Shown here one piece after another: positions 28,520-28,972 of a stretch of DNA of 64,000 nt. This DNA is from Octopus sinensis (lineage: Eukaryota). The notes below the pieces were generated by a model that was given only the letters and a program-made list of their open reading frames with translations, did no database searches and was not told the origin of the DNA. The position numbers and the translations under genes are program-made. Numbering within the stretch: the first letter of the stretch is position 1; the number at the start of each line of letters is the position of its first letter. The stretch spans positions 13,391,360-13,455,359 of the forward strand of contig NC_043019.1 of assembly GCF_006345805.1 (NCBI RefSeq), in the 5' to 3' direction.

Positions 28520-28972
28520 AAAGCAAGTAAGCTCGCGGAGTCTTCAACAGACTGGGGAGGGATATGCTTAGCAGTATTTCTTCTGTCTCCATGTTCTGAG
28601 TTCAAATTCCGCTTAGGTCAACTTAGCCTTTCAACCTTTCCAGGTCAACAAATTAAGTACCAGTTACGCACTGGGGTCGCTATAATCAACTTAATCCCTT
28701 CCCCCAAAATTGAGGCCTTGTGGGTACGGACCGACTCGAGAGCTGCGATTCGTTACGGACCCGGATTTTCAAGGGCCGCCGAGAGCGCACCGGACGCCGC
28801 CCGAGACGCGGCGCTCTACAGGTACCATATCCGTATCTCCGGACGAGCTGATTCCATGGACGCGGCCCTTTACGAAGAAGAGAGAACTCTTCCCCAGGGC
28901 TCCCGGCAACGTCTCCGGGCTCGCTTGCGTTGCTGCTGCTTCCAGTAGAAAGGATTATTATTATTATTATTA
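28520..28972 (+). mobile_element. Meta/RUDI-like SINE carrying an rRNA insertion in its 3' tail
   Basis: SINE body ends at GGCCTTGTG (28722), resumes at TGCTTCCAGTAGAAAGG-(ATT)n (28937); the uninterrupted tail form is seen on the minus strand at ~53117-53140. Confidence 0.8.
28721..28936 (-). rRNA. 28S: 28S rRNA fragment (non-functional, ~215 bp, region just 3' of expansion segment D7b)
   Basis: Minus strand reads GAGCCCGGAGACG...GGGGAAGAGTTCTCTCTTCTT...GGCGGCGTCCGGTGCGCTCTCGGCGGCCCTTGAAAATCCGGG...CCGTACCCA, collinear with the conserved eukaryotic LSU segment GGGGAGAGTTCTCTTTTCTT...GGCGGCGTCCGGTGAGCTCTCGCTGGCCCTTGAAAATCCGGGG...CCGTACCCATATCCGC (recalled). Confidence 0.9.

What the first reader, a model, noticed from the sequence alone, without database searches (positions are those of the whole stretch)
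28716..28950. Antisense 28S rRNA fragment inserted cleanly into a SINE 3' tail
Seen: a 214-bp GC-rich block (28723-28936) interrupts the SINE tail CCTTG-TG-CTTCCAGTAGAAAGG with only TG repeated at both junctions and no loss of SINE sequence (uninterrupted tail at ~53117-53140). Known: the block is collinear with eukaryotic LSU rRNA just downstream of D7b, near the protostome hidden-break region; rRNA-derived SINE parts exist in other lineages (5S SINE3, mammalian SINE28). Inference: RNA-templated break repair or an RT double template switch. If multi-copy, it would be an undescribed rRNA-chimeric cephalopod SINE producing antisense-rRNA Pol III transcripts.
Basis: partly seen in the sequence, partly recalled or inferred. 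Interest (0 to 1): 0.75.

Follow-up and report, generated by a model that had tools for sequence, protein, structure and literature searches.

The report
28S rRNA patch in old SINE
A 216-base piece of the animal's own 28S ribosomal RNA sequence was pasted, backwards, into an already old and decayed SINE copy. It most likely served as a one-off patch for a chromosome break, which is an ordinary kind of genomic scar and not a new mobile element.

Summary
Window 28723-28938 is an antisense fragment of eukaryotic LSU rRNA (Rfam RF02543 positions 1632-1834, 102 bits, E 6e-25). It is 97% identical to an unnamed 28S contig and 95% to Argonauta hians 28S. It interrupts a SINE tail with no loss of SINE sequence.

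Three results argue against the new-SINE-family idea.
- **Age.** The block is several-fold younger than its host SINE copy: 28/32 CpGs retained versus 3/14, and 1.9% versus 8.2% non-CpG change. It therefore entered a pre-existing genomic copy.
- **Orientation.** The rRNA is antisense to the SINE. An RT switching from SINE RNA to rRNA would give the same sense.
- **Junctions.** Homology to native 28S runs into the SINE on both sides (GTG on the left, CTTC/TGCTTC on the right; chance about 3e-4). This is the mark of microhomology-mediated templated repair.

The block carries seven derived changes, four of them CpG decay and at least three breaking conserved rRNA helices. It is therefore a decaying pseudogene fragment, not an assembly chimera or contaminant. 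It occurs once in the window, against 30 SINE copies. Two protein-space searches found only native rDNA.

Verdict: a one-off templated "patch" insertion of the class-2 TSI type. RNA versus DNA template is unresolved, and genome-wide copy number was not testable. Low interest.

The parts
28520..28722 (+). Host SINE copy 'B', head and body up to the break. It is a tRNA-type cephalopod SINE with an (ATT)n tail, full length but old.
   Evidence: The alignment with 15 other window copies shows it about 19.5% from the window consensus, with 3 of 14 consensus CpGs retained. Its private change rate is 8.2% at non-CpG positions and 38.5% at CpG positions.
28720..28722 (.). Left junction microhomology GTG, shared by the SINE (CCTTGTG) and the antisense strand of native 28S (GGATGGTGGGTACGG).
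   Evidence: The blastn alignment to L001 and L002 starts at 28720, inside the SINE.
28723..28936 (-). Unambiguously rRNA-derived segment of 214 nt. The rRNA sense strand is the minus strand, so it is antisense to the SINE. It is a pseudogenised 28S fragment covering the helices directly 3' of D7b.
   Evidence: Rfam RF02543 model positions 1632-1834, 101.9 bits. It is 97% identical to L001, 95% to Argonauta 28S and 90.5% to a third 28S type, L003-L016. There are 7 derived changes, at 28771, 28849, 28857, 28866, 28892, 28896 and 28934.
28937..28942 (.). Right junction microhomology TGCTTC, or CTTC if the break was blunt after 28722. It is shared by the SINE (GTGCTTCCAG) and native 28S antisense (GCCGCTGCTTCGCCC).
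   Evidence: The blastn alignment to native 28S ends at 28942, inside the SINE tail. The chance of at least 3 nt and at least 4 nt of microhomology together is 2.5e-4.
28939..28973 (+). Remainder of the SINE B tail: CTTCCAGTAGAAAGG followed by (ATT)n.
   Evidence: It is colinear with the uninterrupted copies.
28766..28769 (+). TTTT run on the SINE-sense strand, 44 nt into the block. It is a potential Pol III terminator.
   Evidence: Read directly from the sequence. It is the complement of the conserved rRNA motif GAAAAU. The terminator function is inferred from general knowledge of Pol III.
28287..28519 (+). Upstream SINE copy 'A'. SINE B starts directly after its (TTA)n tail at 28500-28519, so the two lie head to tail.
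53157..53178 (-). Uninterrupted copy of the same 22-nt tail (CCTTGTGCTTCCAGTAGAAAGG). This is the empty-site comparator.

Best explanation
This is a one-off templated 'patch' insertion. A chromosome break, or staggered nick pair, arose in the tail of a SINE copy that had already sat in the genome for a long time. The break lay between 28722 and what is now 28939.

A free 3' end at the break annealed by a few bases to the host's own 28S rRNA or to rDNA, and about 216 nt were copied. The new strand's end then re-annealed to the other side of the break through 4-6 bases of microhomology, and the gap was sealed.

In the RNA-templated version, the top-strand end ...CCTTGTG-3' pairs with CAC in ...GUACC-CAC-CAUCC... 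of 28S rRNA. A reverse-transcribing polymerase copies towards the rRNA 5' end and stops at the 3' foot of the GC-rich D7b segment. The cDNA end ...TGCTTC-3' then pairs with the right-hand break end. Candidate polymerases are a LINE RT acting without its endonuclease, or a repair polymerase with RT activity. This version yields exactly the observed antisense orientation. The DNA-templated version primes from the other end on the rDNA template strand and gives the same product.

Since then the patch has decayed as neutral DNA, with 7 changes, mostly CpG transitions. It has no function.

Shown: the rRNA identity, an origin closest to octopod 28S, microhomology at both junctions, the age gap between block and SINE, and pseudogene decay. 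Inferred: the break, the polymerase, and whether the template was RNA or DNA (I put RNA at about 55%).
For: - **Identity.** Rfam LSU hit, E 5.9e-25. 97% identity to native 28S contig L001 and 95% to Argonauta hians 28S inside a complete SSU-5.8S-LSU unit.
- **Clean insertion.** With the block removed, copy B aligns without a gap to the other tails.
- **Microhomology.** Homology to native 28S extends over 28720-28942, which is 3 nt and 4-6 nt into the SINE on the two sides. In a simulation with Argonauta rDNA, P(at least 3 and at least 4) = 2.5e-4.
- **Age gap.** 28/32 CpGs are retained in the block against 3/14 in the host SINE (Fisher p = 2.6e-5). Counting only changes private to copy B, the rates are 8.2% versus 1.9% at non-CpG positions (p = 0.011) and 38.5% versus 6.2% at CpG positions (p = 4e-4).
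- **Real and aged, not an artefact.** At all 7 differences, three independent 28S types agree against the window. Four are CpG to TpG/CpA. The changes at 28934, 28849 and 28857 each turn a G-C pair of a conserved helix into A.C (searches compared).
- **No retrotransposition hallmarks.** There is no A-rich or microsatellite tail on the block and no duplication of 5 bp or more.
- **Precedent.** This matches class 2 templated sequence insertions: no TSD, no poly(A), microhomology, DSB patch, often RNA-derived (PMC5110952). 28S fragments with a median of 269 nt are known to be retro-inserted in primates (PMC11838501).
Against: - No reads or population data were available. The single-copy status and the empty allele were therefore not shown genome-wide.
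- The species of the window and of L001 are not known to me. A few of the 7 differences could in principle be polymorphisms of the donor rDNA copy, although three references agree against the window at every one.
- RNA versus DNA template is undecided. [quoted passage not shown]
- The 2-bp TG overlap is also compatible with a staggered endonuclease cut by a LINE enzyme, as an alternative to a spontaneous break.
Confidence: 0.8

Rival explanations
1. A LINE machinery retro-inserted an rRNA fragment in trans by endonuclease-dependent target-primed reverse transcription. The LINE endonuclease nicked the SINE tail, the nick primed on 28S rRNA, and a second nick 2 bp away produced the TG duplication. 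This is a mechanistic variant of the RNA-templated version of the best explanation.
For: TG appears at both junctions. The insert is antisense cDNA continuous with a top-strand 3' end. Octopus genomes carry expressed RTE-clade LINEs (PMC9115989). 28S fragments of 50-482 nt are co-inserted by L1 in primates (PMC11838501).
Against: The block carries no 3' tail, neither poly(A) nor a microsatellite. It does not end at the rRNA 3' end. The 'TSD' is only 2 bp and is also explained by native 28S reading TG there. No LINE sequence adjoins it. Class 1 TSIPs need a TSD of at least 5 bp plus poly(A).
Confidence: 0.1
2. One reading: a new rRNA-chimeric SINE family. The SINE with the embedded antisense 28S block would be, or descend from, a source gene that spread as a unit and gives Pol III transcripts carrying antisense rRNA.
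For: rRNA-derived SINEs exist elsewhere (SINE28, PMC4994717). The SINE 3' end, including the (ATT)n tail needed for retrotransposition, is intact downstream of the block.
Against: - The block occurs once in the window, while 30 SINE copies, at least 7 of them with tails, lack it.
- The host copy is about 4-6 times older than the block and has lost 11 of 14 CpGs, so it is a dead copy that was hit later.
- A TTTT run 44 nt into the block on the SINE-sense strand would stop Pol III before the tail.
- Searches with both open frames across the block in 5.8 billion proteins, and exact look-ups of the two chimeric ORFs, gave only native rDNA or nothing. This negative has low power.
Confidence: 0.03
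3. An RT double template switch occurred during the original SINE retrotransposition. The RT would have copied the SINE tail, jumped to rRNA, and jumped back to the SINE RNA at exactly the next base.
For: Double template jumps do occur, as in the tripartite chimeras of PMC2104539. Microhomology at the junctions would suit template jumps.
Against: Template-switch chimeras have their parts in the same transcriptional orientation, whereas here the rRNA is antisense to the SINE. The return to the exact next SINE nucleotide is not expected. The block and the SINE differ several-fold in age.
Confidence: 0.02
4. An assembly chimera, or contaminant rDNA reads spliced into a SINE.
For: rDNA and rRNA reads are very abundant. 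No reads were available to check spanning coverage.
Against: - Both junctions are precise and restore a continuous SINE.
- The block is not identical to native 28S. It carries 7 derived changes, dominated by CpG decay, that break conserved helices, as expected for an old genomic insert.
- Its nearest named relative is octopod 28S, not a foreign taxon.
Confidence: 0.03

Closest known systems
Class 2 templated sequence insertions (TSI/TSIP; Onozawa et al., reviewed in PMC5110952)
   Same: A piece of a few hundred bases is copied from a distant, transcribed locus into a break. There is no TSD of 5 bp or more and no poly(A). Both junctions show microhomology, either orientation is possible, and the donor remains intact.
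   Different: Those were described in human cells and populations, with various donors. Here the donor is 28S rRNA/rDNA, the recipient is a SINE tail, and the organism has cephalopod-type SINEs. An RNA origin was not shown here.
Dispersed rRNA pseudogene fragments (RepeatMasker 'LSU-rRNA' class; human rDNA-like fragments, PMC5381670; 28S/LINE-1 chimeric insertions, PMC11838501)
   Same: A short 28S-derived fragment lies outside the rDNA array and decays neutrally. Its size of 216 nt falls within the reported 50-482 nt range.
   Different: It is not joined to a LINE, it is antisense to the adjacent retroelement, and it sits inside a pre-existing SINE instead of being co-inserted with it.
SINE28 (mammalian 28S-derived SINE, PMC4994717)
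   Same: It contains 28S-derived sequence associated with a SINE.
   Different: [quoted passage not shown] Here an internal 28S segment lies antisense, as a passenger in a dead tRNA-type SINE copy, with no evidence of mobility.
Template-switch chimeric retrogenes (U6-L1, MINE, tripartite chimeras; PMC2104539)
   Same: Two unrelated RNA-derived sequences are fused directly, with short homology at the joints.
   Different: Those have the same orientation of parts, 10-20 bp flanking direct repeats, a full-length 5' partner, and all parts of the same age. None of these holds here.
Endonuclease-independent LINE retrotransposition at DNA lesions (Morrish et al. 2002; own knowledge, also cited in PMC5110952)
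   Same: A DNA 3' end at a break primes reverse transcription, junction microhomology is present, and TSD and tail are lacking.
   Different: The template here is not a LINE RNA, and the RT involved is unknown.

Membership tests
Eukaryotic LSU (28S) rRNA-derived sequence | Significant sequence-plus-structure match to the LSU covariance model, and colinearity with native 28S | tested here: met
   RF02543, 101.9 bits, E 5.9e-25, model positions 1632-1834. 97% and 95% identity to L001 and to Argonauta 28S over 223 nt.
Functional rRNA gene | Full-length LSU within an SSU-5.8S-LSU unit, with conserved helices intact | tested here: not met
   Only about 6% of the model is present. No other rDNA piece occurs in the window. 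Three derived changes break G-C pairs that are intact in native 28S.
Class 2 templated sequence insertion (DSB patch) | No target-site duplication of 5 bp or more | tested here: met
   At most TG (2 bp) is repeated, and this is also explained by the donor sequence.
Class 2 templated sequence insertion (DSB patch) | No poly(A) tract or polyadenylation signal on the insert | tested here: met
   The block ends directly in SINE sequence on both sides.
Class 2 templated sequence insertion (DSB patch) | NHEJ/MMEJ-type junctions (microhomology, microdeletion or non-templated bases) | tested here: met
   3 nt and 4-6 nt of microhomology, chance 2.5e-4. There is no deletion and no filler.
Class 2 templated sequence insertion (DSB patch) | Insert derived from an RNA intermediate | not testable with these tools
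   The segment spans no intron, processing site or hidden-break gap that would distinguish rRNA from rDNA.
Class 1 TSIP / LINE-mediated retrocopy | TSD of at least 5 bp, a 3' poly(A) or LINE-type tail, and an endonuclease target motif | tested here: not met
   There is no tail and only a 2-bp overlap. The endonuclease motif of the local LINE is unknown to me.
Template-switch chimeric retrogene | Parts joined in the same transcriptional orientation | tested here: not met
   The SINE is on the plus strand and the rRNA sense strand is the minus strand. The criterion comes from PMC2104539.
Template-switch chimeric retrogene | All parts inserted in one event, so of the same age, and flanked by 10-20 bp direct repeats | tested here: not met
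   The block is about 4-6 times younger than the SINE copy. The flanks of SINE B are (ATT)n, so direct repeats cannot be read.
rRNA-derived SINE (SINE28-like) / new chimeric SINE family | Multiple dispersed copies sharing the same structure | tested here: inconclusive
   One copy occurs in 64 kb against 30 SINE copies. No chimeric ORF was found in two protein-space searches or two exact look-ups. The whole genome was not searchable.
rRNA-derived SINE (SINE28-like) / new chimeric SINE family | A Pol III transcript can run through to the 3' tail | tested here: not met
   A T4 run at 28766-28769 lies on the SINE-sense strand upstream of the tail. Its terminator function is inferred, not assayed.
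rRNA-derived SINE (SINE28-like) / new chimeric SINE family | The rRNA part derives from the LSU 3' end and provides the promoter-bearing head | tested here: not met
   It is an internal segment (model positions 1632-1834 of 3401), antisense, and located in the SINE tail. The definition of SINE28 comes from PMC4994717.

The most novel reading that the evidence does not exclude
The decayed SINE-plus-block locus is nevertheless transcribed, for instance by read-through or from a residual SINE promoter. It would then yield antisense-28S RNA or small RNAs. Alternatively, the chimera was copied to further loci and founded a low-copy rRNA-carrying SINE subfamily in octopods.
Probability: 0.03. Interest if true: 0.55.

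Novelty: new member of a known kind. Interest (0 to 1): 0.2.

Why it matters
It matters little as a functional element. It is a neat, well-preserved natural example, in a genome with cephalopod-type SINEs, of microhomology-mediated templated insertion from the most abundant cellular RNA or its gene.

Both junctions are readable to the base because the recipient is a repeat with known uninterrupted copies. Such cases can calibrate how often rRNA or rDNA is used as repair filler outside mammals and yeast. A genome-wide census could show whether reverse transcription or DNA copying dominates.

It also shows that rRNA-like blocks inside SINEs should not be read as new composite SINEs without copy-number and age tests.

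Tried and rejected
- **Whole-window Rfam scans.** Scans at gathering threshold and at E <= 0.01 did not report the LSU fragment. Only the 1-kb scan did. This is a filter effect, not absence. The 123 sub-threshold miRNA hits all lie on TA/CA-rich simple sequence and were dismissed.
- **tRNA search.** ARAGORN found no tRNA, so the SINE heads are too diverged to be called.
- **Exact look-ups.** The two chimeric ORFs (155 aa and 174 aa) are not on record in the assembly collection.
- **Protein-space searches.** Searches across the block in both open frames found only native rDNA ORFs. They were useful for fetching reference 28S, but as a test for further chimeric copies they have low power.
- **Hidden-break run-off.** I considered that the block's rRNA 5' end marks the 28S-beta 5' end, which would prove an RNA template. 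This is rejected, because the AU-rich D7a loop lies about 115-150 nt further 5'.
- **R1/R2-type elements.** I considered co-transcribed 28S from rDNA-specific retrotransposons. From my own knowledge, their target sites lie far 3' of this segment, and no LINE sequence adjoins the block. I did not pursue it.
- **TSD of the host SINE.** It is unreadable because both flanks are (ATT)n.
- **Pfam scan.** Ten of the longest ORFs in the window gave nothing. The neighbourhood is repeat-rich and non-coding.
- **Junction searches in public collections.** I did not run junction 30-mer searches in the metagenome, prokaryote-genome or viral collections. These do not hold the host genome, so a negative would be meaningless.

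Full report
**Observation.**
The sequence at 28716-28953 reads CCTTGTG | 216 nt of GC-rich sequence | CTTCCAGTAGAAAGG, followed by (ATT)n. The block is 63-65% GC in a context of about 40% GC.

A 1-kb Rfam scan places the minus strand of 28743-28945 on LSU_rRNA_eukarya model positions 1632-1834 of 3401, at 101.9 bits and E 5.9e-25. Whole-window scans missed it because of their speed filters.

The host is a tRNA-type SINE with an (ATT)n tail, present in 30 copies in the 64-kb window. With the block removed, the host copy ('B', 28520-28973) aligns to the other tail-bearing copies without any gap at the junction. It shares the identical 22-nt tail with the copy at 53157-53178 on the minus strand. 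The block occurs only once in the window, and no other part of an rDNA unit is present.

**Getting reference 28S.**
No nucleotide database of the host was available. I therefore translated the two frames that are open across the block on the plus strand and searched the 5.8-billion-protein collection for spurious ORFs called on rDNA. This gave three reference types:
- a Logan contig, L001;
- a complete Argonauta hians rDNA unit, L002, with SSU, 5.8S and a 4601-nt LSU confirmed by Rfam;
- a third 28S type, identical across 14 sequencing runs, L003-L016.

Window 28720-28942 is 97% identical to L001, 95% to Argonauta and 90.5% to the third type. The closest named relative is therefore octopod 28S, not a foreign contaminant.

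In Argonauta 28S the block is nt 2215-2436. The AU-rich D7a loop, where the protostome hidden break lies (PMC6925239), is at about 2061-2100. The GC-rich D7b segment ends exactly where the block begins.

**Junctions.**
The alignment to native 28S does not stop at the block edges. It runs 3 nt into the SINE on the left (GTG, 28720-28722) and 4-6 nt on the right (CTTC or TGCTTC, 28937-28942).

The 'TG repeated at both junctions' therefore need not be a target duplication, because native 28S reads TG there. A blunt break after 28722 with 3-nt and 4-nt microhomologies explains everything. So does a 2-nt staggered break with 3-nt and 6-nt microhomologies.

In 2 million random placements of a 216-nt donor from Argonauta rDNA, microhomology of at least 3 nt and at least 4 nt occurred together with frequency 2.5e-4. 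There is no poly(A) or microsatellite tail on the block, no filler, and no deletion.

**Age.**
At all 7 positions where the window differs from L001, the three reference types agree with each other. All 7 changes are therefore derived in the window:

| Position | Change | CpG decay |
|---|---|---|
| 28771 | C>A | no |
| 28849 | C>T | yes |
| 28857 | C>T | yes |
| 28866 | T>C | no |
| 28892 | +C | no |
| 28896 | G>A | yes |
| 28934 | C>T | yes |

Four of the seven are CpG to TpG/CpA. Comparing the Rfam alignments of the window and of native L001, the changes at 28934, 28849 and 28857 each convert a G-C pair of a conserved helix into A.C. One of these pairs closes the GCAA tetraloop hairpin. The block is thus a decaying pseudogene fragment. 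That excludes a recent assembly splice of rDNA reads.

The host SINE copy is much more decayed:

| Measure | Host SINE copy B | rRNA block | p |
|---|---|---|---|
| CpGs retained | 3 of 14 | 28 of 32 | 2.6e-5 |
| Change at non-CpG positions (private to B) | 8.2% | 1.9% | 0.011 |
| Change at CpG positions (private to B) | 38.5% | 6.2% | 4e-4 |

The 'private' counts include only changes not shared with B's closest relative. The SINE copy was already old when the block arrived.

**Mechanism.**
These facts fit a templated patch at a chromosomal break, sealed by microhomology. This is the class 2 templated sequence insertion pattern: no TSD, no poly(A), microhomology, and a patch copied from a distant transcribed locus (PMC5110952).

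Two concrete routes give the observed product.
- **(a) RNA template.** The top-strand 3' end ...CCTTGTG pairs with CAC in ...GUACC-CAC-CAUCC... of 28S rRNA. A reverse-transcribing enzyme copies 216 nt towards the rRNA 5' end, up to the foot of the GC-rich D7b segment. The cDNA end ...TGCTTC then anneals to the right-hand break end. This necessarily puts antisense rRNA on the SINE-sense strand, as observed.
- **(b) DNA template.** The bottom-strand 3' end ...GGAAGCA primes on the template strand of rDNA, and the copy re-anneals through CAC/GTG.

The segment spans no processing site, so rRNA and rDNA cannot be told apart. Literature points both ways. TSIs were shown to be RNA-derived, and 28S fragments with a median of 269 nt are retro-inserted in primates (PMC11838501). 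However, human rDNA-like fragments include IGS (PMC5381670). Octopus genomes do express RTE-clade LINEs, which would provide an RT source (PMC9115989). I put RNA at about 55%.

A double template switch during SINE retrotransposition is contradicted on three counts:
- orientation, since such chimeras are joined in the same orientation (PMC2104539);
- the exact return to the next SINE base;
- the age gap.

A new chimeric SINE family is very unlikely, for four reasons:
- the host copy is a dead, CpG-depleted copy hit secondarily;
- a T4 run at 28766-28769 on the SINE-sense strand would terminate Pol III 44 nt into the block, before the tail;
- none of the other 29 copies in the window carries the block;
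- the protein-space searches and exact ORF look-ups found no second chimeric copy, though that test has low power.

A genome-wide junction count remains the decisive test I could not run.

**Comparison and verdict.**
The locus works like a class 2 TSI, or endonuclease-independent retro-insertion, and belongs to the broad, known class of dispersed rRNA pseudogene fragments. It is not a SINE28-like element and not a template-switch chimeric retrogene, because defining features of both were tested and not met.

It is a new example of a known kind, of modest interest. Its main value is as a base-resolved case of rRNA or rDNA used as repair filler in a genome with cephalopod-type SINEs.

Noticed in passing
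window 1-64000: Whole-window Rfam scans missed the 102-bit LSU fragment that a 1-kb scan finds easily, both at gathering threshold and at E <= 0.01 with permissive filters. Other short rRNA or ncRNA fragments in the window could be hidden in the same way.
   Followed up: partly
window 40743-41277: A tandem array with a 184-bp period, 3 copies at 85% match, made of the SINE body. This looks like a SINE-derived mini-satellite and not like independent insertions.
   Followed up: partly
window 28287-28973; also 56049-56663, 53137-53557, 33626-33997: SINE copies often sit head to tail, with the next copy starting directly after the (ATT)n tail of the previous one. This suggests preferential insertion into (ATT)n microsatellites or tails. 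Two tail types exist in the window: a short ...CCTTGTGCYTNNAGTAGAAAGG(ATT)n tail and a longer ...GTTTGTCTGTCCTTGTTTGTCCCCTCTGT... tail.
   Followed up: no
window 29360-29700 and 29780-29850: A long polypyrimidine (CT-rich) tract, with GC skew about -0.8, is followed by a C/A-rich CCCAC-type stretch just downstream of the locus. This low-complexity DNA could be fragile, but no link to the break was tested.
   Followed up: no
window, many sites (e.g. 3700-4600, 16450-17050, 35230-35880, 43100-43450, 61140-62050): There are 123 sub-threshold hits to miRNA families (mir-297, mir-3149, mir-466 and others), all on both strands of TA/CA-rich simple repeats. These are compositional matches, not miRNA genes.
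   Followed up: no
L002 6001-6798 and neighbours (Argonauta hians BAAFZT010000267.1): The public Argonauta hians annotation carries 'hypothetical proteins' (Ahia01_001421000, _001421100, _001421200) that are ORFs on the antisense strand of 28S rDNA. These are annotation artefacts.
   Followed up: partly
window 28771; L001 755; L002 6494: All three reference 28S types read CCCUGGAAAAU where the eukaryotic consensus is CCUUGAAAAU. The window's derived C>A change happens to restore the consensus U, which I read as a coincidental back-mutation.
   Followed up: no
window 52966-53018: A (GTA)n microsatellite of about 50 bp lies next to the uninterrupted comparator SINE.
   Followed up: no
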